From Sminthopsis crassicaudata (lineage: Eukaryota), in NCBI RefSeq assembly GCF_048593235.1, contig NC_133618.1:33080478-33144477 (forward strand): 64,000 bases of DNA, in the 5' to 3' direction. Shown piece by piece: positions 14,701 to 33,000 of the stretch (position 1 is its first letter; each line of letters opens with the position of its first letter). The notes below the pieces were generated by a model. That model saw only the letters and a program-made list of their open reading frames with translations. It made no database searches and was not told where the DNA came from. The position numbers and the translations under genes were made by a program.

Positions 14701-17700
14701 TGATGAAGGAAGGCACAATTGTCCAGGAGCCTGAGGTCCCAAAGCAGGCCTTTTGATCTAAGGACATTTTTTTTTTTTTTTAAATGAAAGTGGCAATGAG
14801 GAAGAAGATAGAGAAGAAAGCAGCTAAATTGGGATCACCCACAAGTTCCTTTTTTATATTTTTAACTTATCGCACTGCTAATGAATACTGCCAGAGAAGA
14901 GGTAAGATAATAAAGCAGCAAAGTCACAAGTACTCTGAGAGGAGACCTTAACACAACCCTCACCAATCATCCAACTGTAAAGATGGTCCCTGCTGTGGCG
15001 ATCCTTCTTTGGGAATGGCCAACAAAGAATGAAATACAAGTCAGTTGTAAGTGAAGAGAAAAAGAAAAGGCATAGACCACGTCCTGAGGTGATTATCCCA
15101 ACTTGCACTCACTCTCCCTAAAGAGATTCCCAGCATTGGCTACTATATATGTCTCTTTAGTACTCTAGGGTAAGCACTGAGGGGTTGGGAGTAGTCCTAA
15201 ACCAGTAAGCCCCCAACAGCATTTACTAACCCCCACTCCATGATAACTTGAAATCACTGAGACAGATCGACCTAATTCACTTTTTAAAAAGAGTAAATTT
15301 TTTGGGGGGAAGGAGTATAGTAAGAATAGCTGATATAAACTATCCTCCAAAAGTCTGACAGTAGACTTCAGGGGAAAGATACTTTAGATAGAGTACATGT
15401 GAGTAATGGGGAGACAATTCCAGATCAGTGGAGTGACTCCTTCCCCCCACAGAGGCTGACTTGCTGAGCCAATGGTTTGGGTAGATCCAGCTGGACCCCA
15501 GTGGAACCCCGCAAAGAATAGTAGCAGTAGAAGGTGTCATAATTTCTCCCAGCTCTTTCACTTGGGCAAGGAAGAATCGAGCTGAGCAGGAGGAAAAAGG
15601 ATAGCCCCGTTCCTTGTTCTGGGAGAGCATAGGAAAGAAAGTTTGGGCTGAAGGCTTGTCTATTGACCCCCAAGACAGCCCAGAAGACACCGAATTGAGG
15701 GACTGACCAATTCTCTATTGTACTGCAAGCAATTTACCCAGATTCCCTTGGGGCTGATAATGCCAGCAGCCATTTATCTTCCTCAACCAAGGAGCTTGTA
15801 GTTGAAGGGGTCCCCCTTTGCAACTGTAAGTTCCTCAGCTACAAAACTTTTTAAACTTTGTCTTTATTTGTATCTCCCAGGACTTAGTATAGGGCCTGAC
15901 ATACATTAAGTGCCTCATAAACACTCCTTGACTGGGGGACTACTTTCTTCTTGGTCCTGACTGTACACTCCTTGACTGGGAGAGAGGAGACTATGTTCTC
16001 TTTGGACTAGTCTACACTGAGTGAATTTCTGAAACCTGCGGAATAGGTGGGCTGGCCCAGCTCAGACTGAGTGGCTGTGGGGACCTTGGAAAGCCACAGG
16101 GGAGCTAAGTTTAATCATCACCTGTTAGGACCCTGAGTGCTTTGTTTCACACAATCAGAAAGAGCCAGTTCCCTCCTTGGGGTCACATTACCAGCTGCCT
16201 ACTGGTCGTCTCCAACCGCGTGTCCCCAAGTATTCTCAAACCTGCCCCTTTTTTGTTGAAGCAACCATAATCTTTCCAGTAACCTAGATTTTAGCCTCGG
16301 AGCGACACTGGACTCTTTTTCAGTCGTTTTCAGTCAGGCCCGACTGTCCCTGACCCCATTTGGGGTTTTCTTGGCAGAGATGCTGGAATGGTTCGCCATT
16401 ACCTTTTCCAACTCATTTGGAAACTGAGGCAAACAGGATGAAGTGACTTGCCTATAGCATCACACAGTGAGGCTGAATTTGAATTGGGATCCTCCTGACT
16501 ATTTCATGAATATTTCATCGATATTTTATACATATAAAAAGAAAAAAAAGCAAATAAATGAAAACAATGGCAATGATAGCACATTCAACAGTGGGACAGT
16601 GAATAAATCACTGGAGTTGGAGGCAGAAAAAACCTGAAGTCATCTCTTCCCACTGAGCCACCTAGCTATCCTTCCATACAGCAGACACTTAATAAATGTA
16701 GCTTGGATGATCTCCCAGTTTGAATCTCCTTTAGGAAGATTTTTCCAGCTTCAAGGCTAAATGTGCTTTTTTGTGCCCTGCTCTGTTGCTCCAGCCTTCT
16801 TTTCCAGGCTTTGTTGAATGAATGAAAGGAATGTGTTAATAACTCACCGCGTGCTAAGTAAGAGCTGGAGGTACAAATAGGTAAGTAAGGCAGTCCATGC
16901 TCTCAACATGCTCAAGTTCTAAAGGGAGAGACACAAAATCCGGCTTTCGGCTGCAAATCCAATGCGGTCTTTGAATAAGTGAAGCCCTTGGGAAGAAGCA
17001 GGAAGGCCGGTGGTGATCCATCTTCTGAAGTGACATTTCCATTAAAGTAATCCCATGCAGCCCGCAAGTCAGGAGGAGCTGAGTTCAAATCCGACCTCAG
17101 ACACTGTGGCTGTGGGACCCTGGGCCAGTCACTTACCCCCAGTTGCCTCAGGAATATATATATAAAACCCCATGCACTGAGGCATTCAATGACGTTAAGG
17201 ATTTGGGTCTTGGTTTTCTGTTTCTTCGGTAGCTGTGGCTGCTGGGGAGGCTCGGGCTACCCCCTTAGAGGGAAAGGTGGTCGGGTTTCATGAAGGGTGA
17301 CTGCGCTGAAGGAAGGCTGCGGGGCTGCGGGGGTGGGGGGGGGGGGTTGTGTGTGTGTGTGCGCGTGTGTGCGTGTGCGTGTGTGCGCGCGCGTGTGTGC
17401 TGAGCGCCTGCGTACTGGTGCCTCCGTATCCATGCTGTGTTCTCCCCTTGGTCTTGGACTTAGCCACTGGTCACAGAGTGTCCCTAAGTGACAGCTGGGG
17501 TCATGGGCCGCTAGGATGGCAGTCCCCGCTCGCCGCTGAGATTGCTCTCGGGGTGAAGCTTGGGGAAACAGGCCGGGCGGTCTGGGGACTGGGGGCAGCC
17601 TCTCCCGGAGTCTCAGGGAGGTCGTGGCTGCCGCCCCCCCCCCACCTCGGCTAAGCCAGCTTGATGGTCCCATGGGGGCCGCTGCTGCTGGCCCTGTGAG

Positions 17701-18239: not shown

Positions 18240-18808
18240 TTTGATTCATGCGTGCTCGCATGCACGTATTCAGGGGGTGTCCGTTCTGGCCAGCCCGGCT
18301 GGAGCCTCCGGGGCGGGCGGGGCGGAACCGCGCAGCTCTGCGGGCGCTCGCAGCTGTGCCTTCCATCCCCAGCTGTCAAACCTCGGAGCCCCGCCTCCCA
18401 CCAGGGCTCGGATCATCGAGCTTTCTCATTGGCCAAAAGCCTCGCCCAGAGAGCTCGATCCTATGAGAAACCGAGGCCACGGCCGCTGCCTTAAAAAAAA
18501 AATTCGGGCCATCTGACTTCCAAGGCCAATGGGAACGCAGGATTGAGGATGCCTTTTCCATCCGCAGCCCTGACGGACCGCTATGCCCGCCCTCCCAGGC
18601 ACTGATTGGGCAGGCCGCGTGAGCTCGGCCTCCCATTGGCCAGCTCTGCGGGAAAGGGGCCGGTGGGGAGGGTGGTCGCGGGAGCGCTGAGTCAGCTGCT
18701 GCAGACCGGGCTGGGTGGGGTTGTGGGCTGCACCTGGTCCTGAGCGGGGCCAGAGGGGCCGGTCGCTGCGGGTCCCCGCCGCCTGCCGCCGCCGCGCCCG
18801 CCGCCGCC
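18240..18808 (+). promoter_or_regulatory. CpG-island promoter of the RNF181-VAMP5 chimeric gene, with four CCAAT boxes and GC boxes
   Basis: CpG-rich. ATTGG/CCAAT at about 18427, 18526, 18605 and 18633; gggcggggcgg at about 18312. Strong Kozak context gccgccgccATGG. Confidence 0.75.
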
Positions 18809-21800
18809 ATGGAGAACTTCCCCGAGGAGATGGATGAAGAGCAGTACTGGCAGAACGAGCTGCTGCATCTGGCGCGGTGGGCGGGGCTGGCCATCTCTGG
18901 GGATTATCCGGGTCCGCCTTGGCGGGGCGGGGATTATCCGGGGCTGGCCGCTAGTGCGGGGCTGGAAGAGGGTGCAGAGGCCGCCTCGCCCAGCGATTTG
19001 GGGGTGGGGGTGGGGATAGGGATTATCCTAGGGTTCCCTAGTCTAAGGATAGGGATTATCCGGGGCTGTCCAGTCTGGGGATACGGATTATCCGGAGCTG
19101 TCCAGGAGAGAGAAGGGGGTAATCCAGAGATTGAGGGATTATCCGGGGGTTGCCTAGAATGGGGTTTTCTTGTTCAAAAATGGGGGATTATCAGGGGGGG
19201 GTCACTTTTCCAGGCTAGGGATTATCCGCGGTTGTCTGTATAGCGCAAACTGGAGGCTATGGGGGCGGGGGAAGATTGCCCGGGGGTTGCCTAGTGGAGT
19301 AGCACTCGGGTTCTCCTCGTCCGGAGAGGAGGAATTACCTGGGATCACCAGGTTAGAGATTATTGGGGGGCGGGGCGAGGCTGACCAGTCCTGACTTCAG
19401 GTTCCTGAGGACCACATTTGTTCAGCCTGGGGATTGTGTGGAAGGGAGAGAGGAGGTGTGTGCTGGGGGCNNNNNNNNNNNNNNNNNNNNNNNNNNNNNN
19501 NNNNNNNNNNNNNNNNNNNNNNNNNNNNNNNNNNNNNNNNNNNNNNNNNNNNNNNNNNNNNNNNNNNNNNNNNNNNNNNNNNNNNNNNNNNNNNNNNNNN
19601 NNNNNNNNNNNNNNNNNNNNNNNNNNNNNNNNNNNNNNNNNNNNNNNNNNNNNNNNNNNNNNNNNNNNNNNNNNNNNNNNNNNNNNNNNTTGGGAGTTAG
19701 GGATTGGGGATTATTTAGGGGTTGAGTTTATGGAATGGGGAGATAACCAGGAAATTATCGGGGGAGCACTGATCCCCAGATTGGAGATTCTCCCTGTTCG
19801 CCCTACGATTTGGAATGGGACATCGGGGCCAAACGGGGTTTCTGGTGTGGAACGGGCGAGGGAAGGGGGATTACATTTGGAGCCAGGGATTAGGAGAGAG
19901 GAGAGAGTTTGTAGGGAAGTGTCCCGAGAAGGGCATTGTGGGAGGGCAGGGGTGGGGCTTCGGGAGGGCTCGGTTGATTGGGGGAAGGATCTAGTCCCTC
20001 AGAAGACCCAAGGCTGAGATTTATCTGGGAAAAGGGGGGCTGGGAGTCTGGATTATTGGGGTGTGTGTTTTCACTGCTCTGCTATGACTCAACCATCTTT
20101 GCAGTGAACTTTTTTTTTTGGTCCTCGTTTTTCTATCATGTTCATTTCTCAATTTACATTTCCACCCACTCCTACATTAAACTTACTCTACAACCAAAAT
20201 GCACACTCAGACAAAACGGGGGGGGGGGGGGGGAGAATAGTTCTGACCATGGATCCAGCCACTTTCTGTTCCCATGGATACGTTTCCCCCCTCCCAGACT
20301 GAGAGGAGAGAGGCCGGTCTTCAACAATCCCCTGGAAGTGAGATTGTCATGAGACTTCCCCACTATTTTAGAGCTGGCTTCTTTTTCCTTTGTGTAATTA
20401 TTGTGCATATCATTTCCCTGATTTTCTTCTTTCTGCATCTCTCTATGCCAGTCCCACCATGTGTCTATATTCATGATGGTCCTTTCTCACAGAGCTTATC
20501 CTGTTTCATTCATGAGCCATTACTCAGTCATTTTCCACCCACCCGACTTTGTCTCCAATCATCCGCTTTGTTTGTGAAACAAAAATAATGCCATGAATAT
20601 ATTGGCATATTCGGGGACTTTCTTTCTGCCCAGGACACTTTTCAATGGGATGGGCATTGAGCTGCCAACAGGTGAGCTCTTTAGCTGGGAAAACCGACTT
20701 CCTCCCCCTGCTGCCAAGAGAGCCGTGGAGAACCTGCCAAAATCCACCATCACAGGGGCCCAGGCTGGTGAGGGGCCTCCTTCCCCCCAGCCCTCTCTCA
20801 TCTCTGACACTTCCCTGTTAACCTGTTTGACCTTTATGGAACTAACATTATTCCCTCCCCTTCTTCCGCTACCCAGCATGCAACCAACTCCCCGTTCAAT
20901 CTTTCAGACCAGGCTGGGTGAACAAAAAACATCCAAATGAGTGACTGACCTGCCTTTGAGGAGGCAACACTGGGAGGGATGGGGGTGGGCAGGTGGAGGA
21001 AGCAGGTCTTGATCTGATGGACTTCCCCTCACAGACGCAGGTGTCAAATGCCCTGTATGTCTTCTGGAGTTTGAGGAGGAGCAGACTGCCCTGGAGATGC
21101 CCTGTGAGCATCTATTTCATTCAGACTGCATCGTGCCCTGGCTAGGCAAGGTATCCACAGCTTCCCATCCCGCCCTGGTACCCAGCCCCGTTAGTATGTG
21201 GCCCTGCCCATAGATCCTGAGTGTTGGGGATGACCAAAAGAAGCTTTCTTCTAAACACGAACTTAAGCCTCTGAGGGGGGGAGAGAGGTGAGGGAGAAAT
21301 GGATCCTGAACCATCTTCATCCCCACTCTGTCTTCCCAGACCAACAGTTGCCCTCTGTGCAGATATGAGCTGCCTACAGACAATGAGGACTATGAAGATT
21401 ACAGAAGAGAAAAGGTAGGGCTGGCCTCGGGGGCATGAGGAGTTGTTCCTTCCCCTAAACTGCAGTGTAGACAGGAGACTGGAGCAAACCATGCAGCCTT
21501 GCCCCCCTGGTGAGGTCAGAAGATCAGGATTTGAGTGTTAATGAGAAAGAGATGATTATCTTGATCCTATGATCCTCTTCACTCTGACCATTTGTAATGA
21601 TTCCAAGGAAGTAGAAGGGCCCTGGTCATGTCTTTCCCCCAAGAACTCCTACCCACAAGTTCACCAGAAAGTTCCATGGCAGATTTGGGTGTATGGGGAA
21701 GTGGGTTCCACGAGGACCCAACCTAATGTGGGCCTTCTTGCCAGTCAGGGAAGGATCCAGAGATGTGCCTGGATCCTGCTGAAAGGAGGGAACGTCTCCT

Positions 21801-22706
21801 CTCAGACCAGGTCTGTACTAAGGGTTAGGGGGAGGGATGGGAGAAGGGAATGTGGGATCCCTGTACTTGAGTAATGTGGGGCTCCCTAGAATGGGCATGT
21901 GGCGGGCAGGAACTCTCCACTTGGCCTGTGTTGCTGTCGGGCTGAGGTTCTGAGGCTGCTGAAGGCCTATGGAGTTGGGAGTTCTTAAGAACAGAGGGGG
22001 AAGAGGATCAATAAGGGTAATGAGGCTTGCTGAGGAAGGTCAGTTAGGGTAAAGGGAATTTGGTCCTAATTGCTCAGTACAGGGTGATAAGCAGTAAGTG
22101 GACCAGTCCTGCATCAGAGATGGAGCCCTTCCAAGAAGATGGCAGGGGAAGGGTCTAACCAACACAAGTTAGAGAGTGAGCTGGGGATGGGAGGGCAACG
22201 GGAGATGAAAAATGAAAGAAGTATCCCTCTGCAAGGGGAGAGTGAATTGTTTGTGAGGCAGTGAGTTTCCTTTTGTGGGAGGATTCTTATTCAGGTCCAA
22301 TCTCGTCTCCCCCAGCTCAAGGGTTCAAGAGAAAGGTGGGTCTGGGAACTGAGGGAGAATTGCTGGGGACAGAAGGGCTGCCTTGGAGGCTTCAGAGGGA
22401 GAGGGTTTGGGTGATTCGAATACCCCTCTGATCCATATTGATAAACCCTGTTGGCTCCTGCTGTTCCAGAATGCTTTTGCCAGGGCCAACAAGGCCCTGG
22501 CCCTTAAACAGCCTTGGGCAGACTTGGATGGGAACATCCGATGCCGCCTCTTCTTGGGTCTGATCATCACGGCCTTAATGCTGCCCCTCTTGAAGTGGAT
22601 TATTGTGGCTACCACGGAGCGTCCTGTGAATCTTCATAACCCGGCAGCGTGGCATCAGGGGGCCACAGCCAAAGGTTGGGGCTTCGATCCAAGACCAGGA
22701 GACTAA
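18809..22706 (+). CDS. Chimeric RNF181-like RING-H2 E3 ligase with a VAMP5-derived C-terminal transmembrane anchor (about 209-242 aa depending on linker exons)
   Basis: RNF181-type exons 18809-18876, 20634-20767, 21035-21150 and 21340-21414, all GT-AG and with the same phases as canonical RNF181. Intact RING: CPVC...CEHLFHSDC...CPLC. Candidate linker exons 21745-21823 (79 nt) and 22316-22335 (20 nt). Terminal exon 22470-22706: [46 protein letters not shown]...PRPGD*. Confidence 0.75.
18897..19790 (+). repeat. Degenerate G-rich repeat (core gggattatccggg) in intron 1 of the chimeric copy, interrupted by an N-gap
   Basis: More than ten spaced copies of ggattatcc or variants; same core as the RNF181 intron-1 minisatellite. 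Confidence 0.75.
21745..21823 (+). CDS. Candidate linker exon, a degenerate and shortened VAMP5 exon-2 homologue
   Basis: Acceptor ccttcttgccag. Encodes SGKDPEMC...SDQ, versus VAMP5 exon 2 AGKELERC...SDQLLDM. Possible donors at 21810 (cag|gtctgt) and 21823 (agg|gttagg). Confidence 0.45.
22470..22706 (+). CDS. VAMP5-derived terminal exon (juxtamembrane region, TM helix, tail)
   Basis: Aligns to the VAMP5 last exon as recalled: [27 protein letters not shown] (mouse) versus [31 protein letters not shown]. Ends PRPGD*, versus human SGPGN*. Phase-0 acceptor ctgttccag. Confidence 0.78.
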   Translation, partial: NAFARANKALALKQPWADLDGNIRCRLFLGLIITALMLPLLKWIIVATTERPVNLHNPAAWHQGATAKGWGFDPRPGD

Positions 22707-22898
22707 AGTGGATCATGGGGAAAGAGAAGCCAACCCCGCCCAACCATTGGGTCCCACTAAGGAACACTGGTTGGTGCTGGAGTTGAAGAAACCCTGGGGA
22801 GCCCTCTTTGGTGGGCTTGGTTCCACCAGTTGTACCCTTGCACGCTGACCCCCGCCCCCAGGGGTACAAAGTAAATCACCCCTTGCTATATAGAGCTG

Positions 22899-22904
22899 AA
22901 TAAA
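22899..22904 (+). terminator. Polyadenylation signal AATAAA of the chimeric gene
   Basis: About 190 nt after the stop at 22706, followed by GU/U-rich sequence (ctcattctgtgtg). Confidence 0.7.
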
Positions 22905-24399
22905 AATCCCACTAGGGTAAAAGGAATTCTCATTCTGTGTGAAGTGCTCTGGGGAGGTTCCCTACCTGGGGAGGTGGTGACAGATTGGTTAGGAAATCTG
23001 TTTCCCATTCTCAAAGGACATCCTAATTTAGATGGATTTTTCCAGTCATCTCCATTGTTGACTCTCTACATCCAGAGTTTTTTCCCCTTGCTTCTCAAGC
23101 TGGAGACAAGCTACCCAGGAATCAGAGAACCTGGATGCAAAGCTCATCCCAATACTTATCATTCTCATGATCTTGGCCAAGTCCCAAATGGGAAGGTTGA
23201 ATTAAATAGTCTCTAAGGTCTTTCACTCGTCTAAAGTTATGATCCTCCAGAAAGTTTTGGAGGCCCTTTACATGGGCAGCTCAAGTGGAAACTAGAGTCA
23301 TGAAGCAGTACATAAGAACCCTTGATGACTACATATCAACTTGGCTTTAAAATATAATATTTAAATTTTTATTGCATTCTAATTTGTTAATCAGTTTCCT
23401 AGTACAGTTTAATCTGGTTTGACCCCTGTGTATAGGGCATAAGGAGGCTCCTTCCCTGGCCCTAACAGCCCCATTCCAACTTCTTAAACCCTGATCTTCC
23501 CCCTTTTTCTGAGCCTTCTCAGCTATTCCTTTACTCTTATATAAAATATGAACAGGAGGGAAGGGACCCTAAAGTTTGTTCCCAAAGTTTAATCTCCTGG
23601 ACAAATACAAGCAATTATTTTTGTTCTAATCATCATATTTTCTTTCACCCCCAATTCCACCCAAAGCATTCTTCCGGGAGGCACATCAGGCAAGGGCATC
23701 CTTCTCTGGCAACCCTTGAGTGGAGAGTGGGAGAGAGAATGCATCATTATTTGTGGGAGACAAGCAGGAAACAGACCCAGAGTTGTCAGGGTGGATTAAC
23801 TATTAGAGAAATGTCAGAGGCCTGGACAGGCTGGGATTTTGGCCAGGTGGGACGAGAAATCTGATTTTATGAAAGGGCAGATGGTACCTTTTGGGACTGC
23901 TCTTGGTTCTCCTGCTCCCTGAGAGCCCATGGGCACCCAAAGCAAAGAGTCTGGGGTGGGAAGCCCCTCACCACTGCCTCAGAACTTAGTGAGGTCCACT
24001 TGGCCGACATCGGGGTGGGGGTGTGAAAGACGGATCAGTGGGCATTTAGGTAGTGCCTGCTATGTGCCAGGCACAGTGCTGAGGCAGAGCTGGGAAGAGC
24101 TACTCCAGTCCTCAAGGACATGTTGGAGTCAAAGTTCTGGGTTCAAAGTCCAGAAATGCTACTTTGGGACCCTGCACTCCGTGTCAGTATCCAGCAATCC
24201 ATCCAAAGGTTGCATTGGATGCTCTTTGATACTCTTTTTCGATATAAGTACAATGAAGTGAGAGAAGCAAAGTACGACCCAGGAATGGCCCGGGTCCACA
24301 AAGGCAACCCTCCTGGAGGCAGTGAGACTGAAGCCCAGTCTCCGAGGTTAAGTGGCCATTGGGTTAAGTGGGAGAAGAGCTCAGGCGGCTGGGGGGCAG

Positions 24400-24736
24400 C
24401 ACTGAGCCAGCATAGGCGGGCCCAGCTCCGACCTGAAACCCGCTCTGGCTCCGCCTCCTGCGGGTAGCAACCAATGAAAACCTAAATTCGCGGGAAGCCT
24501 TCATTGGCTCGAGCTTTACACCACCTGATTCACAAAGACCAATAGAAAATTATCTTTGGGGTTTCCGGGATCTCATAGTCCCGGTGGGGCGTGGAGCCTT
24601 CCTTATCGTGGTTCTGATTGGACGTTCGGGACGGAGCTAGTTCTCCCATTGGCCAGAGTGGCGCGAAAAGGGAGGGATCTTTTAGTGCAGCATCATAGCG
24701 TCAGGGGTCGCTCGCCGGCTAGGATTCACGGTTGCC
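24400..24736 (+). promoter_or_regulatory. RNF181 CpG promoter with five CCAAT boxes
   Basis: CCAAT/ATTGG at about 24471, 24503, 24539, 24617 and 24648. ctcccattggccag is shared with the upstream copy's promoter. Confidence 0.75.
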
Positions 24737-27412
24737 ATGGCGTCCTATTTTGAGGAGCACGACTGTGAGCCGGGAGTGCCTGAGGAACAGTATCGACAGA
24801 ATGCGCTCCTGGAGTTGGCACGGTACGCGGGGGGGTCATCGCCCGGGGCTGGGCCGGGACGTGACCCCTCCGGAGGGATGAGAGGAAGGGGGCTCTAACC
24901 GGGGGTTCGGGAGGGGCCGTTATCCGGGACTCCGGAGCGTTCGGAGGGGAGCACTATCCGAGGTTCTGGAGGGTTGGGAAGGAGCGTTATTGGGGGTTCT
25001 GGAGGGATGGGAGGGGGGCGTTATCCGGGGTTCTGGAGGGTTGGGAGGAGACATTAACGGGGGTTTTGGAGGGATGGGAGGGGGCCGTTATCGTAGGCTC
25101 CGGGGGGATCCTAGGGATGGGAGGGGGGCTATCAGGGGTTCCGGAGGGATGGGAGGGGGAGCTATCTGGGGATCTGAAGGGATGGGAGGGGGCATTATTC
25201 GGAGCTCTGGAGGATTGGGAGGGGGCGTTATCCGAGGCTCTGGAGGAATGGGAGGGGGAGCTGTCCGGAGTTCCGGAGGGATGGGAGGGGGCATTATTTG
25301 GAGCTCTGGAGGAATGGGAGGGGGGATTATCCGGGGTTCCGGAGGGATGGGAGGGGGGATTATCCGGGGTTCCGGAGGAATGGGAGGGGGGATTATCCGG
25401 GGTTCCGGAGGGATGGGAGGGGGGGCTATCCAAGTCTCAGGAGGGATGGGAGGGGGGGCTATCTGGGGATCTGAAGGGATGGGAGGGGGCATTATTCGGA
25501 GCTCTGGAGGATTGGGAGGGGGCGCTATCCGAGGCTCTGGAGGAATGGGAGGGGGAGCTGTCCAGAGTTCCGGAGGGATGGGAGGGGGGATTACCCAGGG
25601 CTCCGGAGGAATGAGAAGGAGTGCTGTCCGAATTTCAGGAGGGATGGGAGGGGGTGCTGCCCTGGGTTCTGGAGGGATGGGAAGGGGCATTATTCGGGAC
25701 TCTGAGGAAGGGATGATCCATATATTCTTCAGGGGTCCCAGAAGGCTCTTGGGACCAGAGGAGGAAATTATTGAGCCAGTTCCTAGGGGTGACAGGGGCA
25801 CCAAGGAAGCAGTTATTGAAGTAGGAAGTCCTGGGCTAGGACCTTAGAGGCTTTAGAGACATCGGGGCCCTGGAGTTAGAAGTTCTGTGGGTGAGAGTGC
25901 CAAGAAGGAGGGATTATTATTACGGGGATCTAACAGCTCTCTCCCCACCCCCAAATCCTTTTCCCAGGACACTGTTCAATGGGATGGACATTGAGCTGGC
26001 ATCTGCGGACTTCACAGACTGGGACCATCGCCTGCCCCCGCCTGCTGCCAAGAGAGCTGTCCAGAGCCTGCCAAAAGCCATCATCACGGGGGCCCAGGCT
26101 GGTGAGGGGCCTCCTTCCGCCAATCCCTTTCCATTTCCAGCCAGCTTCATTACTTCTGCAGCCAGTGCAGACCCCTCTTCCTCCCCCTCGAATACTCCTG
26201 GCTTTTAGTTGGCTTGGAAGGAAATTTGAATCAAGATTCTCCTGAGTGCAAGGAGAGCAGGCTGCTTTTGAGGCCGCAGTGCTGGAATGGATTTTGGGTG
26301 GGGGGAGAGGCGAGGGCATATGTGGAAGCTAAAAAGAGCTTTTTCCCCAGATAAAGGTCTGAAGTGCCCTGTGTGCCTTCTGGAGTTTGAGGAGGAACAG
26401 ACTGCCTTGGAGATGCCCTGCCAGCACCTCTTCCATTCAGAGTGCATTCTCCCATGGCTGGGCAAGGTACCCGAGATTTCTGCACAATCCATTTCCCCCC
26501 ACCATTTGTTTACTGCACATGTCCATAGAGGAAAGTTTCATTCCTACCCTTCTTGAAATGTCAAGGGTGGAAGCCACAATTATGAGACATGACCCAAAGA
26601 ACTGAAATCAGGGGAGAAAAGTAGAAAAGGAGCCCAGAAGTGTTCACTTGCCTAAGATGCTTCCCCTCTTCTTTTAAACCTCTTAGAATCCCCAGTTTGT
26701 TCCAAGGCTGCCTCCTACATGAGGCTTTTCCTAGTCCTGCCAGTTGCTAATCACTTGGTATTTATTTTTGTGTATAAGGTGTTCCCGTCCAAGCAAGGAC
26801 AGGAATTGTCTTTGTAGCCCAGATACCTGTAGCACAGTGCCTGGCACTTAACACTTATCCAATTGAATGATCACTCCCACTGTTTATTCAGACCAACTCC
26901 TGCCCACTGTGCAGATGTGAGCTGCCCACAGACAATGAAGAGTATGAGGAGTATAAGAAAGATAAGGTAAGAAGAACAGTAGGAGACTCAGGCATTACTG
27001 ACCTGGCCCTTCTGGGCAAGGAGTATTTTACCCATGGGGGGGGGTGGCTACAGAAAGGTCAAAGGACAACCCCAGGCCTGGCCTAAAAATCAAAAGACCT
27101 CTAGTTGATATTTGACTTTGCTACTTTGTGATTGGGTAACCTTAAGTCAACCTGTCCACCATTTTAGACTTTTGACAGATCAGTAGAATCACAGGAGGGG
27201 TTTTATAAGGCTCTGGGTTGTCTTCTCACTGTACCTGTCCTTTAGGACAGACCCTGGGCAGAAGCTGAGTAACCCCCCTCCTCTTTATCTTCTGGAGATC
27301 TCAGTTGAATCAGGTGGGGTTCCCCTCACCGCTTCCTACTTTTCTCCCGTAGGCTCGGCGGCAACAGCAGCAGCATCGGCTTGAATACCTCCATGGAGCC
27401 ATGTATACATGA
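24737..27412 (+). CDS. RNF181: E3 ubiquitin-protein ligase RNF181 (canonical, 156 aa)
   Basis: Exons 24737-24822, 25968-26101, 26351-26466, 26892-26966 and 27353-27412. Protein runs [12 protein letters not shown]...LLELAR/TLFNGM...[11 protein letters not shown]...[21 protein letters not shown].../[25 protein letters not shown] at 27453-27458. Confidence 0.96.
24900..25710 (+). repeat. G-rich 33-bp minisatellite (about 22 units) in RNF181 intron 1
   Basis: Unit ggagggatgggaggggggattatccggggttcc. It generates the spurious ([11 protein letters not shown])n and ([10 protein letters not shown])n ORFs. Confidence 0.92.
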
Positions 27413-28783: not shown

Positions 28784-30344
28784 TTAGATCATGGCAATAC
28801 TCTCTGGTGTACAGTTGAGGTGAGTGGAGGTGCTGCTGCTCCCTGGAGACTTGCAGGCTCTGCTAGGGGCTGGCTGGAAGGCTGCCACCAATGTGTCTGT
28901 GGACACTGCCCCGAACTCGTAGCTGAAAGTGCCGTAGAAAACAAGGATGTCGATGACGAAGACCCATTCAGACAGGGCGGCCACATGCTGGAGCTGCGAG
29001 CTTTCATGAATGAAGAAGATACCACCTGTAGCAGAGGCTAAGGAATCCAACTAGCAGATGGGGACGGCCCTGACCCCTCCCTGACGACCTTTGGGCTACA
29101 GAAGGGGAAAAGAGAATCCCATGCCCAGAAGCCACAAGCAGCCCACCTGGGTGAACCACTGAAGCCCTTTCTTCAGCACCACTTGCCTCATCTCTACTAA
29201 TGACAAAATACCATCTGCCCGCCAGAATTGTTGGGGTGATCCCCCAAGGCCTCTGCAAACTGGCCACCTAATCTCTGGGATTGCCCTCCGTCTTCGAGGA
29301 TCGACCCCACAAAGGATACTGAGAACCAGGGCCACAAAGGCAATAATGGCGAGCACAGCACGGAAGTGGGCCATGGCGAAGTCCAGGGGAGCAGCAGCAC
29401 CATGGTAGGAGAGAGCACAGTGGAGACAGACGAAGAGGAGGCCCGCTGGGAAGGCGATTCCTGCCCCGATGTAGTGCAAAGACTTGGCGTGATCCACCTG
29501 GGCAGTGTAGACAAAGTGCTGACCAAAGCCACCCCGCCTCACCAACCCCCGGGCACGTTCACTATCCTGGCCAGAGATGGATCCGCCCCCCCTAACCCCG
29601 GGGTTTCGAGGATGGTTGGGGTCAGCAGGTGGGGCCAATGCTCAGAGAACAGTCTCACCTGGAAGTTGCCAACTACCACCAGGCCAGCAGCATTGAAGCA
29701 GCCCGTGATGAGAGCCATGGTGTTAACCCAGGACCGGTGACTCTGCTCCAGCAGCTGCCCATAGCGGAGAAGGCAGACCAAGGCCACTGTGGAAGAGAAT
29801 GGAAGGGGCTCTGAGGGACAGAGCAGCTATCTCTTAAGCACTGACTGTGCCTACGGGTTCTGAGATACAGAGCCTACTCCCAAAGGAATACAGGGCTCCT
29901 TCCACCAGATATAAGCGGGGAACATGGTGCCTCAGAGAGGGGAACACTGCCCCTGGGCCCCTAAGGGAGGGTTCAGGCCAGACCCTATCCAGGAGGTGGG
30001 AGCAGAAGCCCCAAGTCCAGCCAGGGGTTCCCCAACTTGGAGGCTTTTTAGATAGGTCTGCAGTAGAGTAGATAGTTGATGATAAACCCTTGATTGAGTA
30101 GTTGATAATAAACCCTTTCTTGGACTTAAGTCAGGCTGGAAGTAAAGGATCAGACAAACAGAGTCGGCCTTTAGCCTTTGTGGAATAAAAGGAAAACTTC
30201 CCTCCCCCTCCCGCCAGTGCATTTCTTCTTCACAAGCCTGAGCTACAGTTCAGATCACCTGATGGTGACCAAAGTAGCAGCAGATGTGGCCTAGAATGGC
30301 TCCCTCGGGACAAGGGGTCTGGGGCCAGGCCCTTCCTCACATGC

Positions 30345-30376
<32 letters not shown>

Positions 30377-31810
30377 TTAGTGGGGACCCAGAGAGGAAAA
30401 GAGGGGTCACAGATGGATGGGAAAGGAATGCAAAGGAGGCACTTACCCATGAAAGCGCCCACGTTGCCTATGAGGCTGAAGAGGCAGCTCTCAGGGGGGT
30501 ATGTGCCACATTTACTGGAAAAGGGGAATAAGGCAAGGGGGGAGTCAAAGGCAGTCAGCACAGGCAGGTGAGCTTCCCCACCCCGTCTCCCATTATCCGG
30601 GCAGGTGACTCCTCTCAATGATCTGAGGGCCCTGGGAAAGCTGGGACAAAGGGGAGGGCTCGTGCTAAAGGCAGGCCGGGGCTGGGCAGGTAGTCTTCTC
30701 AGAGGCTCCGACACTGCTTGGGACTTGATGGCACTGGAGGCTGTGGCGGGCACACAAGGAGGGGCACTTCCGGGCCTGTACCCTGCCCCCCTTAGGGGCC
30801 TCACCTGATCAGGGGGATGTCCTCCAGAGTGCAGCAGCTCTTGGGACCACCCTGTATGTTGGGGTCGGTGGAGCAGGACTCGTTGTAGGACCTGGGAGGG
30901 AGGTGGGACAGGGAGCAGACTGGGGCAAAGTGGATTCTCTGCAGCCCACCTCCTTCACCTGGGGCCTTCTCCAGGCCCTCCCCCAAAGAGCCCTCCCTCA
31001 CCAAAAGCAGAGAAGAGTCCCTTTCTCTCCACTATCCTTGAGATAGAAATCAGTAGGGAAAAAGGGCCTCGAAAGGAAGAAGGGGGATTTGGTGGGAGAC
31101 AGGGAAGGTAGGCAAGATGCCATGCCTGGGGAAAGGGTGGGTGATGCCAAAATCAGAGCACAGCAGTAAGGCCCAGGGTCGCCATCTGACTGCTGCCAGC
31201 CCCTGAGCCCAAAAAAGGAGCAGAGATGGAGGAAGCCTTTAGAAGGAGGGTGCCAGGACTGTTCTCCATACCAGTTCTCCACAGGACACACATGGTGGTT
31301 CATCACTGCCATGGCATACCTGCAAGGGCAGAGGGCATCACTCGCGCCGTTCCCCACCTCTGTACCTGTCAGACCCCGCCATCCGTCCAGCTCCCTCATC
31401 TGGAGTCAGATGCCATGGGGAGTGATCCCCAAGCCACGGGTCCCTGTTCTCCCACCTAGTCCCGCCTAGTGCCACTGGTGTCACTTGGTCCCAAGAGTGG
31501 TGGGTCGTTGGGACTTTGTGCCCATGCATGAGGCCAGGCTACGGGAGACGCCCGAGCGGTCCTGAGTCCCAGCACCAGAGTCTACAGCGGGACAAGGGAC
31601 CTCGTGTGTGGGAGCAAGCTGTTCTGTCCTGCCCGACTCTGTTCCTCCCTGGCCCATCTCCCCCTTCCCCCGGCCAGCCTCCTCTCTCCCACTCGTGTCT
31701 GTCCTCCTCCTCCCCTCCCCCTCGCTTCTCCCTCCCGGTACTCACACAATCCATATGCCAGTGATGGAGAAAGCTGAGAGGCTGACAGGGAGGATGACCC
31801 AGGCGGTCAT
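28784..31810 (-). CDS. TMEM150A: Transmembrane protein 150A (DRAM/TMEM150 family, 271 aa)
   Basis: Coding exons 31810-31746, 31319-31272, 30891-30805, 30514-30447, 29786-29659, 29497-29320 and 29025-28784 (816 nt total, all GT-AG). Protein runs [20 protein letters not shown]...[11 protein letters not shown]. Non-coding exon donor at 32574; ATTAAA on the minus strand at 28181-28186. Confidence 0.96.
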
Positions 31811-31999
31811 GAGGGAGGGGAGCCAGGGTGGGGAAGGGGAGGGGGGGCAGGATCGGAAGTGGGTGAAGCAGGGGGCCCAGCTACTTCAGGACACTTGGAC
31901 CACAAGCATCAGCCTGGGGGAGAGAAGGATGAAGTAGGTCAAGGGACTGTGCCGGAACAGCAGGTGGGGGGGTAGCCTGGCCAACGGAACAGGCTGAGC

Positions 32000-33000
32000 C
32001 TCCGGGATGAGCCGAGCCCACATACTGTGCACGTTCCTCCGGGCATCCCGCACCTCCCCCAAGTGCCCCCCACTCCTAACGGGCCCGGCCGGCCGGCCGC
32101 CACAGCTGGAAACGGCCCCGCTTTGGGGTCAAGGCCACCCGGGCCAGCGGACCGGGCCGGCGGGCGGCGAGGGGGCCCCGCTAACAAAGGCCGGGCAGGC
32201 CCGGGCCGGGGGCCAGTCAGGTGGGGACCAGCGGCGGGATGGGGGTGGCGGGCGGCGGGGGCGGGCACTGCGAGGGAGCCCGCCTTTCGCACCCCAGCCA
32301 GAAGCTCGGCCTGCCCGCTGGCCGTGGGACCCCCGGGTCCGGGCCGAGCGCGCGGCCCCCAAGCAAAGTTCCTCGGCGTCGGGACCTCCCCGGGCTCCGG
32401 GAGCCAGCCGCTCTGCGGGGAGCCGGGCTGCTCCCCCAAGCGCATGGGAAGGGAGGACCAGGGCAGGAGGAGGGCTGAGCCGGGCTGAGGAGTTGGGACC
32501 GAAGCTGGGCATCTCCCCTGGGCGGGCGGGCGGGCGGACCGAGCTCGGGCTCCCCACCCCCCAGTCCCCTTACCGGCCGCCGGACCCCCCAAGCGCAGCT
32601 CTCAGCCGCCGTCCCTTTGAACAGCCCTTTAAAGGATTTAAAGAGCCGGGGCCGGTCCCTCCTCTGCCCTCCCCTTCCCTCCCCTCCCCGCCCCTCTGAC
32701 CAGAGCCGTCGCCGCACCGCCCGATGGGACCTGGAGTCCTCCTGCTGGCAGGCGCGGGGGGCGGGGGGCGGCCCCGGACTACAAGTCCCGGCACCCCCCA
32801 GGCCGGGGAGGTGCCGCTGGGGGCGGGCGGCCCGGCCGCCCCCGCACAATGGCTTTGGTGGGCCGCCCCCCGCGGCGTGGGACTGGCCGGCCCGAAGGAC
32901 CCGAGCTAGGAAACGCCTGGGGAGGAGGGGGTGGGACAGGACGCTTCCTCCAGGCAGCCAGAGCTCGGGCAGAGGTCCAGGTGCAGTCCCAGTCCTTCCT
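32000..33000 (-). promoter_or_regulatory. TMEM150A CpG island and 5' non-coding exon; ZNF143/THAP11-type motif ACTACAAGTCCCG at 32778-32790
   Basis: Very CpG-rich. Exact match to ACTAYRNNNCCCR; several GC boxes. Confidence 0.7.

What the first reader, a model, noticed from the sequence alone, without database searches (positions are those of the whole stretch)
18809..22904. Chimeric RNF181-VAMP5 gene: a RING E3 ligase that has acquired a SNARE-derived membrane anchor
Seen in sequence: an RNF181 paralogue with its own CpG/CCAAT promoter, strong Kozak context and four intact GT-AG exons ending in phase 0 (...YEDYRREK). No RNF181 exon 5 ([11 protein letters not shown]...) was found before the next promoter. 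Instead there is a phase-0 terminal exon (22470-22706) encoding [46 protein letters not shown] plus a ~32-aa tail, followed by AATAAA. Established knowledge: this resembles the last exon of VAMP5 (myobrevin; ...[12 protein letters not shown]... then TM helix and tail), the gene immediately upstream of RNF181 in eutherians. RNF181 is normally a soluble RING-H2 ligase. Inference: the product would be a single-pass, C-terminally anchored E3 with a cytosolic RING, converging on the RING+TM layout of RNF152/RNF183/RNF186. Most of the R-SNARE motif is deleted or degenerate, so it should not act as a SNARE. I know of no description of such a gene, but could not search.
Basis: partly seen in the sequence, partly recalled or inferred. 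Interest (0 to 1): 0.95.

Follow-up and report, generated by a model that had tools for sequence, protein, structure and literature searches.

The report
Marsupial RNF181–VAMP5 fusion gene
This is a real gene found only in marsupials: an old tandem duplication joined the first four exons of the ubiquitin ligase RNF181 to the last two exons of the membrane-fusion protein VAMP5, and the product, probably a membrane-anchored ligase, has stayed almost unchanged across all sampled marsupial orders without ever being described.

Summary
Window 18809-22706 (+) holds six GT-AG exons. Four are RNF181-type (131 codons, intact RING-H2). The last is the terminal exon 22470-22706. Together they encode 231 aa.

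RefSeq predicts the same protein as "RNF181-like" in 12 marsupial species of five orders, at 98-100% identity. The last two exons derive from VAMP5 exons 2 and 3 (hhalign 95.8%, E 7e-9). The first half of the SNARE motif is lost.

Marsupials also keep an intact VAMP5 upstream and an intact RNF181 downstream. This is the layout a tandem duplication leaves behind. Selection is extreme: 27 synonymous and 0 non-synonymous differences between the window and wombat. An intronless Monodelphis contig shows the splice junctions.

The N gap lies inside intron 1 and touches no codon.

Membrane anchoring and ligase activity are predicted, not shown, and the hydrophobic segment is marginal. I found no paper on this gene.

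The parts
18250..18808 (+). CpG-island promoter of the chimeric gene, with CCAAT/ATTGG boxes at 18428, 18526, 18605 and 18635
   Evidence: GC 0.68 and CpG obs/exp 0.75. A 39-nt element around the ATTGG box (18621-18659) matches the RNF181 promoter at 24634-24672, score 33 against 20.7 +/- 2.4 for shuffles.
18809..18876 (+). Exon 1 coding part ([22 protein letters not shown], plus 2 nt), RNF181-derived
   Evidence: 94-97% DNA identity to the Monodelphis and wombat orthologues.
18877..20633 (+). Intron 1, holding a GGGATTATCC-type minisatellite and the assembly gap 19471-19689
   Evidence: The gap is purely intronic. The orthologous Monodelphis intron has no gap (1592 nt).
20593..20633 (+). Alternative in-frame start (ATG 20593) in a 5'-extended exon 2. 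It matches the MN(I/V)L.Y.GTFFLPR N-termini of database isoforms
   Evidence: Sequence. Isoforms P0006, P0008 and P0015. The Monodelphis spliced contig L002 begins in this intron region.
20634..20767 (+). Exon 2, RNF181-derived
   Evidence: 81% identical to RNF181 exon 2 at 25968-26101.
21035..21150 (+). Exon 3, first part of the RING-H2 domain
   Evidence: Pfam zf-RING_2 E 2.8e-11. 84% identical to RNF181 exon 3.
21340..21414 (+). Exon 4, end of the RING domain (CPLC) and acidic stretch, ending in phase 0
21415..21744 (+). Hybrid intron that holds the duplication junction (RNF181 intron 4 joined to the end of VAMP5 intron 1)
   Evidence: About 35 nt before the acceptor align with the end of wombat VAMP5 intron 1. 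The position of the breakpoint is inferred.
21745..21810 (+). 66-nt exon ([22 protein letters not shown]), a remnant of VAMP5 exon 2 with about 60 nt deleted inside
   Evidence: Shares the phase-0 acceptor ccag|NCAGGGAAGGAyC with VAMP5 exon 2, and AGKDLERC aligns with SGKDPEMC. Local DNA score z = 4.4 against wombat but 0.1 against Dromiciops. Present in the RefSeq models of 12 species and in the spliced contig L002.
22470..22706 (+). Terminal coding exon, derived from VAMP5 exon 3: C-terminal SNARE layers, juxtamembrane part, hydrophobic segment and a 31-aa tail, then the stop
   Evidence: tblastn of VAMP5 proteins E 4e-7 to 4e-6. hhalign 95.8%. BLASTP 4e-8. dN/dS 0.010 against Monodelphis.
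22707..22925 (+). 3' UTR with the polyadenylation signal AATAAA at 22899-22904
   Evidence: The Monodelphis contig L002 ends about 20 nt after the signal.
24737..27412 (+). Context: the canonical five-exon RNF181 (156 aa), the downstream parent copy
   Evidence: Exons at 24737-24822, 25968-26101, 26351-26466, 26892-26966 and 27353-27412.

Best explanation
**What it is.** A marsupial-specific chimeric gene. On the marsupial stem lineage, a tandem duplication copied the segment running from VAMP5 intron 1 to RNF181 intron 4. VAMP5 and RNF181 are old neighbours in the same orientation. The result is the order VAMP5 (intact), RNF181 exons 1-4, VAMP5 exons 2-3, RNF181 (intact).

**Why the fusion worked.** RNF181 exon 4 ends in phase 0 and VAMP5 exon 2 starts in phase 0. 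So the RNF181 promoter copy could drive an in-frame fusion transcript from the start. VAMP5 exon 2 later shrank to 66 nt.

**The 231-aa product.**
- A cytosolic RNF181-type RING-H2 domain with all eight zinc ligands.
- A helical linker, derived from the C-terminal layers of the VAMP5 SNARE motif.
- A hydrophobic segment (residues 180-200).
- A 31-residue C-terminal tail.

**How it most likely works.** It is most likely a tail-anchored E3 ubiquitin ligase acting on membrane-proximal substrates. It cannot act as a full SNARE.

**Shown:** gene structure, origin, conservation, and splicing in opossum.
**Inferred:** membrane insertion, ligase activity, substrates.
For: **Structure and frame.** Six GT-AG exons give one 231-codon ORF. 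The splice sites are the same in Monodelphis and wombat DNA.

**Distribution.** phmmer of the terminal exon against 1.84 billion representatives finds only one cluster. That cluster holds 'RNF181-like' proteins of 12 marsupial species from five orders, 98-100% identical for the main isoform, about 92% for isoforms with another N-terminus.

**Origin of the tail.**
- tblastn of true VAMP5 proteins hits only 22455-22607 in the window.
- hhalign 95.8%, E 7e-9; BLASTP 4e-8.
- The 66-nt exon shares acceptor, phase and first residues with VAMP5 exon 2.
- The intron between the two VAMP5-derived exons is 659-759 nt, against 679-765 nt for VAMP5 intron 2.

**Duplication layout.**
- Intact 96-aa VAMP5 exists in wombat, koala, Dromiciops and wallaby, with further VAMP5 models in bilby, devil and opossum.
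- Wombat order is VAMP8, VAMP5, 21.5 kb, chimera, RNF181, TMEM150A on the minus strand.
- The same downstream order holds in the window's assembly and in Monodelphis.
- Human order is VAMP8, VAMP5, RNF181, TMEM150A (PMC4188067).
- A shared CCAAT element shows the promoter was copied too.

**Selection.**
- Window against Monodelphis: dN/dS 0.022 overall and 0.010 in the terminal exon (23 synonymous, 1 non-synonymous).
- Window against wombat: 27 synonymous, 0 non-synonymous.
- True VAMP5 exon 3 evolves at dN/dS 0.24.
- In the tree the chimera clade has a long stem (0.29) and a crown of 0.014 or less.

**Transcript.**
- Contig L002 is 100% identical to Monodelphis exons and joins exon 2, 3, 4, the 66-nt exon and the terminal exon exactly at the predicted sites. 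It ends just after AATAAA.
- In the window's species, RNA runs X15 and X16 hold 0.52 of the gene stretch and 0.00 of the intergenic control.

**Protein.**
- RING matches zf-RING_2 and RNF126 2ect at 2.5e-14.
- The AlphaFold RING core has pLDDT 81-94. Helices span 142-166 and 174-202, and the end is disordered.
- Kyte-Doolittle mean is 2.36 over residues 180-200.
Against:
- The nature of L002 (cDNA contamination or processed retrocopy in a genome assembly) is unknown, although either derives from spliced mRNA.
- The hydrophobic segment contains Pro and Lys. Its summed Hessa-scale free energy is about -0.06 kcal/mol, against -4.7 to -6.4 for real VAMP5 anchors. Membrane insertion is therefore not assured.
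- Pfam does not recognise the tail.
- The homology of the 66-nt exon rests on a short match that is significant against wombat but not against Dromiciops DNA.
- The trees cannot place the duplication relative to the marsupial-eutherian split.
- An Ensembl devil model (P0136) joins exon 2 of this gene to exons 3-5 of the downstream RNF181, so read-through products may also exist.
Confidence: 0.78

Rival explanations
1. The C-terminal hydrophobic segment is not a membrane anchor. The protein would then be soluble or peripheral, and the invariant VAMP5-derived helices would serve as a protein-binding or oligomerisation module for the RING domain.
For: The Hessa-scale sum for residues 180-198 is about -0.06 kcal/mol, against -4.7 to -6.4 for VAMP5 anchors, and the segment contains Pro and Lys. 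The segment is invariant in all marsupials while true VAMP5 anchors vary freely, which suggests specific contacts rather than a simple lipid anchor. AlphaFold confidence there is only 70-76.
Against: Kyte-Doolittle mean is 2.36 over 21 residues, well above the usual 1.6 threshold. The segment is homologous in position to the VAMP5 anchor. It is predicted as one continuous helix, 174-202. Marginal hydrophobicity is common in tail-anchored proteins (established knowledge).
Confidence: 0.15
2. The fusion is a gene-model or read-through artefact. The real products would be a truncated RNF181-like protein and, separately, a small VAMP5-like protein started from an internal promoter or from Met138.
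For: RefSeq models are predictions. Large RNA runs also hold intronic and intergenic words. An in-frame Met exists in the 66-nt exon. Alternative 5' ends are annotated.
Against: An intronless Monodelphis sequence joins exon 4 to the 66-nt exon and on to the terminal exon. The residues before Met138 (SGKDPE) are conserved, including a Ser kept through a TCA/AGT codon switch. Frame compatibility and splice sites are kept in three species examined at DNA level. Reading exon 4 into its intron meets a stop after 7 codons (read from the sequence), and I saw no AATAAA in that intron, though I ran no scan for one. No protein of 43-136 aa in the database uses this exon.
Confidence: 0.04
3. The gene is a decaying by-product of a duplication, that is, a transcribed pseudogene with no function of its own.
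For: It lacks RNF181 exon 5 and more than half of the SNARE motif. Pfam sees nothing in the tail.
Against: The ORF is intact in 12 species of five orders, at 98-100% identity for the main isoform. There are 27 synonymous and 0 non-synonymous differences against wombat, and dN/dS is 0.022 against opossum. It is more constrained than either parent gene.
Confidence: 0.01

Closest known systems
RNF181 (soluble RING-H2 E3 ubiquitin ligase; PMC7605433, PMC7339498)
   Same: Residues 1-131 are a clear RNF181 paralogue, with the same exon structure and phases for exons 1-4. The LPPPAAK motif and all eight RING-H2 ligands are kept. Identity to marsupial RNF181 is about 70%.
   Different: It lacks exon 5 and its conserved ...HRLExLHGAMYT end, and carries a 100-residue VAMP5-derived C-terminus instead. 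The lineage shows a long stem of change followed by near stasis.
VAMP5 / myobrevin (tail-anchored R-SNARE, Pfam PF00957)
   Same: Residues 143-204 align with VAMP5 residues 38-95, that is the C-terminal SNARE layers, the W..NIRCR juxtamembrane motif and the anchor position. The exon boundaries correspond to VAMP5 exons 2 and 3.
   Different: About 25 residues of the N-terminal SNARE motif are deleted, including the stretch VLERD that holds the zero-layer arginine. That layer assignment comes from my knowledge of VAMP2 R56. There is a 4-residue insertion (ADLD), a far less hydrophobic anchor, and no Pfam match. The tail is under much tighter constraint than VAMP5 itself.
RNF183 / RNF186 / RNF182 / RNF152 family (N-terminal RING, C-terminal transmembrane segment; PMC7313026)
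   Same: The predicted layout is the same: a cytosolic N-terminal RING and a transmembrane helix close to the C-terminus.
   Different: The two are not homologous. That family has a C3HC4 RING, while this protein has an RNF181-type RING-H2 whose nearest solved relatives are RNF126, Praja-1 and RNF165. The anchor here has a traceable SNARE origin. This is convergence, not membership.
Chimeric genes created at tandem-duplication junctions (a class known from Drosophila and mammals; named from my own knowledge)
   Same: Both parent genes stay intact on either side. The promoter and 5' exons come from one parent and the 3' exons from the other, the intron phases are compatible, and change was rapid at first.
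   Different: It is unusually old (it predates the split of the sampled marsupial orders) and unusually conserved. It joins a ligase domain to a SNARE-derived membrane tail.

Membership tests
RNF181 family | RING-H2 domain with eight zinc ligands (C-x2-C ... C-x-H-x2-H-x2-C ... C-x2-C) | tested here: met
   C73, C76, C91, H93, H96, C99, C110 and C113 are present and invariant. Pfam zf-RING_2 E 2.8e-11 on exon 3 alone.
RNF181 family | Conserved N-terminal region ([14 protein letters not shown]) with orthologous exon structure | tested here: met
   Alignment A5 shows these columns invariant. Exons 2-4 are 79-84% identical in DNA to the downstream RNF181.
RNF181 family | Conserved C-terminal end encoded by exon 5 (...R..Q..HRLE.LHGAMYT) | tested here: not met
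   No exon-5-like sequence lies between 21415 and 24700. The product continues into VAMP5-derived exons.
RNF181 family | E3 ubiquitin ligase activity | not testable with these tools
   Needs an in vitro ubiquitination assay.
VAMP5 / synaptobrevin R-SNAREs (PF00957) | Sequence homology to VAMP5 | tested here: met
   hhalign 95.8%, E 7e-9 over 58 columns. tblastn E 4e-7 with a single locus hit.
VAMP5 / synaptobrevin R-SNAREs (PF00957) | Complete R-SNARE motif (16 layers with a central arginine) | tested here: not met
   No Pfam hit on the terminal exon or the 66-nt exon, each scanned alone, even at E up to 10. Only VAMP5 residues 38-95 are matched, and the region holding VLERD is deleted.
VAMP5 / synaptobrevin R-SNAREs (PF00957) | C-terminal transmembrane anchor | tested here: inconclusive
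   Kyte-Doolittle 2.36 over residues 180-200, but the Hessa sum is about -0.06 against -4.7 to -6.4 in VAMP5. Helix 174-202 has pLDDT 70-76.
RNF183/RNF152/RNF186/RNF182 tail-anchored RING ligases | Homologous C3HC4 RING at the N-terminus | tested here: not met
   The RING is of the RNF181 C3H2C3 type. No member of that family is among the 49 PDB hits, nor among the 120 hits listed of 192.
RNF183/RNF152/RNF186/RNF182 tail-anchored RING ligases | Layout of an N-terminal RING plus a C-terminal transmembrane segment (PMC7313026) | tested here: inconclusive
   The layout is predicted. Membrane insertion is not shown.
Chimeric genes from tandem duplication | Both parent genes retained intact on either side, in the order expected for a duplication junction | tested here: met
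   Wombat order is VAMP8, VAMP5, chimera, RNF181, TMEM150A. The same downstream order holds here and in Monodelphis.
Chimeric genes from tandem duplication | Fused transcript with in-frame junction | tested here: met
   Phase 0 to phase 0. The spliced Monodelphis contig L002 shows the junctions. Not tested in the window's own species.
Chimeric genes from tandem duplication | Purifying selection on the fused reading frame | tested here: met
   dN/dS is 0.022 or less in two of three pairs (at most 0.044 overall) and up to 0.067 in the VAMP5-derived part, wombat against opossum.

The most novel reading that the evidence does not exclude
The retained C-terminal half of the SNARE motif (invariant in all marsupials) may still dock onto Q-SNARE acceptor complexes, as C-terminal VAMP peptides are known to do. 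The protein would then be a SNARE-directed ubiquitin ligase that marks or removes specific fusion machinery at one membrane. That would be a mode of fusion control with no eutherian counterpart.
Probability: 0.12. Interest if true: 0.85.

Novelty: new variant of a known kind. Interest (0 to 1): 0.62.

Why it matters
This is a clean, datable case of a new protein-coding gene born by exon shuffling at a tandem-duplication junction, with both parents still in place. It has been kept for the whole history of the sampled marsupial orders under tighter constraint than either parent.

It turns a soluble ligase into a probable tail-anchored one, using a piece of a fusion protein as the anchor. Other RING ligases reached that layout independently.

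Opossum and dunnart are laboratory marsupials, so function can be tested directly. The gene may bear on marsupial-specific cell biology.

It also flags that about a dozen RefSeq entries named 'RNF181-like' hide an unrecognised VAMP5-derived domain.

Tried and rejected
- **Laying RNA reads.** No junction counts exist for the window's species, and I sent no piece of that place again.
- **Pfam on the tail exons.** Nothing, even at E up to 10.
- **Word-based homology search with the 78-aa exon.** No candidate of 43-136 aa.
- **ESM Atlas on residues 132-231.** Only low-scoring plant RING clusters (0.53), so uninformative.
- **PDB profile search with the tail.** Only a chance spectrin hit at E 1.2.
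- **Second copy of the VAMP5-like exons, or an intact VAMP5, in the window.** None.
- **The 20-nt exon 22316-22335.** It breaks the frame and is absent from all models.
- **Dating the duplication by trees.** The RNF181 tree leaves chimera, marsupial RNF181 and the other clades unresolved. The tail tree has a stem above 2 substitutions per site and no placement.
- **DNA alignment of the 66-nt exon with Dromiciops VAMP5 exon 2.** No better than shuffles (z = 0.1). Only the wombat comparison is significant.
- **Register of the 3' half of the 66-nt exon against VAMP5.** It stays ambiguous. The DNA favours SDQ = SDQ with a new donor 12 nt upstream. The protein profile favours an ungapped alignment that keeps the hydrophobic layers.
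- **VAMP5 bait.** All conclusions rest on the retrieved sequences.
- **Look-up of the Dromiciops chimera locus.** It failed for lack of a free slot.

Full report
**1. The observation**

- An ATG at 18809 sits in a perfect Kozak context, inside a CpG island (GC 0.68, CpG obs/exp 0.75) with four CCAAT/ATTGG boxes.
- Four GT-AG exons (18809-18876, 20634-20767, 21035-21150, 21340-21414) give 393 nt, or 131 codons. They end in phase 0 with ...YEDYRREK.
- Exon 3 alone matches Pfam zf-RING_2 at 2.8e-11, and all eight RING-H2 ligands are present.
- A canonical five-exon RNF181 (156 aa) follows at 24737-27412.
- Nothing like its exon 5 lies between 21415 and 24700.
- The terminal exon 22470-22706 is open in phase 0 and is followed by AATAAA at 22899-22904.

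**2. The gap**

The N run 19471-19689 lies wholly in intron 1, 594 nt after exon 1 and 944 nt before exon 2, so it cannot affect the reading frame.

Several things support continuity across it.
- The exon 1-exon 2 join is in frame. It reproduces the N-terminus of the orthologous proteins from 11 other marsupial species, most from their own assemblies.
- The Monodelphis intron 1 has no gap, at 1592 nt against 1757 nt here including the estimated gap. It holds the same GGATTAT motif.
- That motif is counted on both flanks of the gap (8 and 2 copies). TRF scores an array only on the left flank, and the paralogue's intron 1 holds a related 33-bp array at 24909-25698.

**3. What the gene model really is**

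phmmer of the 78-aa terminal exon against 1.84 billion cluster representatives gave exactly one hit: XP_007477835.1, 'E3 ubiquitin-protein ligase RNF181-like' of Monodelphis domestica, 232 aa, with the exon at its C-terminus.

Its 90% cluster holds 15 sequences from 12 marsupial species: Monodelphis, Gracilinanus, Dromiciops, Sarcophilus, Sminthopsis, Antechinus, Macrotis, Vombatus, Phascolarctos, Trichosurus, Notamacropus and Petaurus. These cover five orders.

The alignment shows the main product to be RNF181 exons 1-4 (131 aa), a 22-aa segment encoded by 21745-21810, and the terminal exon (78 aa).
- The window's product has the residue pattern of P0003 (Sminthopsis/Antechinus).
- The 20-nt exon 22316-22335 breaks the frame and is in no model.
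- Main-isoform identity across orders is 98-100%; isoforms with another N-terminus are about 92%.

**4. Origin of the C-terminal part**

Pfam, a word-based search, the ESM Atlas and a PDB profile search all failed to name the tail. I therefore fished real VAMP5 sequences out of the database with a typed bait and used only the retrieved entries.
- tblastn of 16 VAMP5 proteins against the whole window hits one place only, 22455-22607. E is 4e-7 to 4e-6 and identity is 37-48%.
- BLASTP of the 100-aa tail against wombat VAMP5 gives 4e-8.
- Profile-profile comparison gives 95.8% probability and E 7e-9, aligning tail residues 12-73 with VAMP5 residues 38-95.
- The acceptor of the terminal exon corresponds to the VAMP5 exon 2/3 boundary, shifted by one codon.

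The 66-nt exon shares the phase-0 acceptor (ccag|NCAGGGAAGGAyC), about 35 nt of upstream intron, and the opening residues (AGKDLERC against SGKDPEMC) with VAMP5 exon 2. It also shares the ...SDQ near its end. About 60 nt are missing inside it.
- The local DNA score is best in the whole window at this spot, with z = 4.4 against wombat. Against Dromiciops it is not significant. This part is likely rather than proven.
- The intron between the two VAMP5-derived exons (659-759 nt in three species) is about the size of VAMP5 intron 2 (679-765 nt).

By homology with VAMP2, whose zero-layer arginine R56 lies in VLERD (my own knowledge), the deleted stretch includes the zero layer and the layers before it. 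At most layers +3 to +8 remain.

**5. How it arose**

Marsupials did not lose VAMP5. Intact 96-aa VAMP5 proteins exist in wombat, koala, Dromiciops and wallaby, with further VAMP5 models in bilby, devil and opossum.
- In wombat the order on one contig is VAMP8, VAMP5, 21.5 kb, chimera, RNF181, TMEM150A on the minus strand.
- Dromiciops shows VAMP8 followed by VAMP5.
- The window's assembly and Monodelphis show chimera, RNF181, then TMEM150A on the minus strand.
- The human order is VAMP8, VAMP5, RNF181, TMEM150A (PMC4188067).
- A fish gene model that merges VAMP5-like and RNF181 sequences (P0161) suggests the neighbourhood is old.

The layout VAMP5 / RNF181 exons 1-4 / VAMP5 exons 2-3 / RNF181 is what a tandem duplication from VAMP5 intron 1 to RNF181 intron 4 produces.
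- The phases fit: exon 4 ends in phase 0 and VAMP5 exon 2 starts in phase 0.
- The promoter was copied too, since a 39-nt CCAAT element is shared.
- The paralogous exons are 79-84% identical and the introns cannot be aligned.
- Paralogue dS is 0.66-0.74, slightly above the opossum-australidelphian dS of RNF181 (0.53-0.60). This fits a duplication on the marsupial stem.
- The trees cannot place the duplication relative to the eutherian split.
- No eutherian or monotreme protein carries the tail.

**6. Is it used?**

*Selection.*

| Comparison | Synonymous | Non-synonymous | dN/dS |
|---|---|---|---|
| Chimera, window vs Monodelphis | 43.8 | 4.2 | 0.022 |
| Terminal exon, window vs Monodelphis | 23 | 1 | 0.010 |
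| Chimera, window vs wombat | 27 | 0 | 0 |
| VAMP5-derived part, window vs wombat | 17 | 0 | 0 |
| Downstream RNF181, three species pairs | 26-42 | 2-7 | 0.018-0.032 |
| True VAMP5 exon 3, wombat vs Dromiciops | 12 | 10 | 0.24 |

The serine that opens the 66-nt exon is kept through a TCA/AGT codon switch. So translation begins upstream of the exon's internal Met. The RNF181 tree shows a stem of 0.29 substitutions per site and a crown of 0.014 or less, that is, a burst of change followed by stasis.

*Transcript.*
- A 1261-nt contig in assembly GCA_029782595.1 (L002) is 100% identical to the Monodelphis exons.
- It joins the 5'-extended exon 2, exon 3, exon 4, the 66-nt exon and the terminal exon exactly at the predicted sites. 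It ends about 20 nt after AATAAA.
- Whether it is cDNA or a processed copy, it derives from spliced mRNA.

*The window's own species.*
- Indirect support comes from RNA runs X15 and X16. They hold 0.52 of the words of 20600-22950 and 0.00 of the intergenic control 22950-23950. X6 and X8 give 0.70/0.14 and 0.66/0.13.
- The largest runs hold both stretches and say nothing.

**7. The protein and how it probably works**

- The RING's nearest solved relatives are RNF126, Praja-1 and RNF165.
- AlphaFold gives a confident RING core (pLDDT 81-94). It predicts helices at 142-166 (low confidence) and 174-202 (pLDDT 70-76), and a disordered end at 203-231. pTM is 0.47.
- Residues 180-200 ([21 protein letters not shown]) have a Kyte-Doolittle mean of 2.36. 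Their Hessa-scale sum is only about -0.06 kcal/mol, against -4.7 to -6.4 for VAMP5 anchors.

The best reading is a tail-anchored RING-H2 ligase with a cytosolic catalytic domain, held near a membrane by a SNARE-derived helix and anchor. It is unable to form a full SNARE bundle. The linker and hydrophobic segment are invariant while VAMP5 anchors vary. This suggests they make specific contacts, possibly with SNARE partners. Membrane insertion, activity and substrates are inferred.

**8. Comparison and novelty**

The gene is an RNF181 paralogue that fails the family's C-terminal feature. It is a VAMP5 derivative that fails the SNARE-motif feature.

It converges in layout on the RNF183/RNF152/RNF186/RNF182 ligases (N-terminal RING, C-terminal transmembrane segment; PMC7313026) without being related to them.

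The gene model is already in RefSeq and UniProt as 'RNF181-like'. Searches of the paper library found no description of a marsupial RNF181 paralogue or of a VAMP5-derived domain in it.

I rate it a new variant of a known kind: a chimeric gene from a tandem duplication, and a tail-anchored RING ligase with a SNARE-derived tail.

Noticed in passing
window 18900-20060 and 24909-25698; L004 10316-10455 and 16523-16653; L007 16041-16170: Intron 1 of both the chimera and the canonical RNF181 holds a related G-rich minisatellite (GGGATTATCCGGGG-type, unit about 33 bp). Smaller related arrays sit in the same introns of opossum and wombat. The array therefore seems older than the duplication and has persisted in both copies.
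   Followed up: partly
window 20593-20633: An in-frame ATG lies in the 3' end of intron 1. It gives an alternative N-terminus ([14 protein letters not shown]...) that matches RefSeq isoforms of Antechinus and Notamacropus and the start region of the spliced opossum contig L002.
   Followed up: partly
protein P0136 (Sarcophilus, UniProt A0A7N4P4S1); corresponds to window 20634-20767 joined to 26351-27412: A devil gene model joins the 5'-extended exon 2 of the chimera to exons 3-5 of the downstream RNF181. This is either read-through splicing between the paralogues or a homology-built artefact.
   Followed up: no
window 18809-21414 against 24737-26966, compared with L004 and L007: Synonymous divergence in the RNF181-derived part of the chimera (dS 0.13-0.22) is about half that of the canonical RNF181 next door (0.31-0.60) and of the chimera's own terminal exon (0.59). 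This hints at extra constraint on the RNA or the DNA.
   Followed up: no
L002 (JARCCX010293679.1 of GCA_029782595.1), positions 951-1090: This contig in a genome assembly is an intronless, mRNA-like copy that is 100% identical to Monodelphis exons. It also carries an internal repeat of about 140 nt of the terminal exon and 3' UTR, probably an assembly artefact. I could not determine the nature of the assembly.
   Followed up: partly
window 22950-23950: Several RNA runs hold 0.72-0.94 of the words of this stretch between the chimera's poly(A) signal and the RNF181 promoter. This suggests read-through transcription, a longer 3' UTR, or genomic background in those runs.
   Followed up: no
protein P0161 (Metynnis hypsauchen): A fish gene model fuses a VAMP5-like protein with a truncated anchor to a complete RNF181, in the natural gene order. 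It is probably a merged annotation, but it suggests the VAMP5-RNF181 neighbourhood is ancient.
   Followed up: no
window 28784-31810 (-) and 31800-33200: A Frag1-family gene (TMEM150A-like, 271 aa) lies on the minus strand just after RNF181. It is followed by a strong CpG island (GC 0.71, up to 0.75 per kb).
   Followed up: no
window 17330-17400: A G-run and a (GT/GC)n microsatellite lie about 1.4 kb upstream of the chimera's start, inside a second GC-rich patch (17200-17700, CpG obs/exp 0.57).
   Followed up: no
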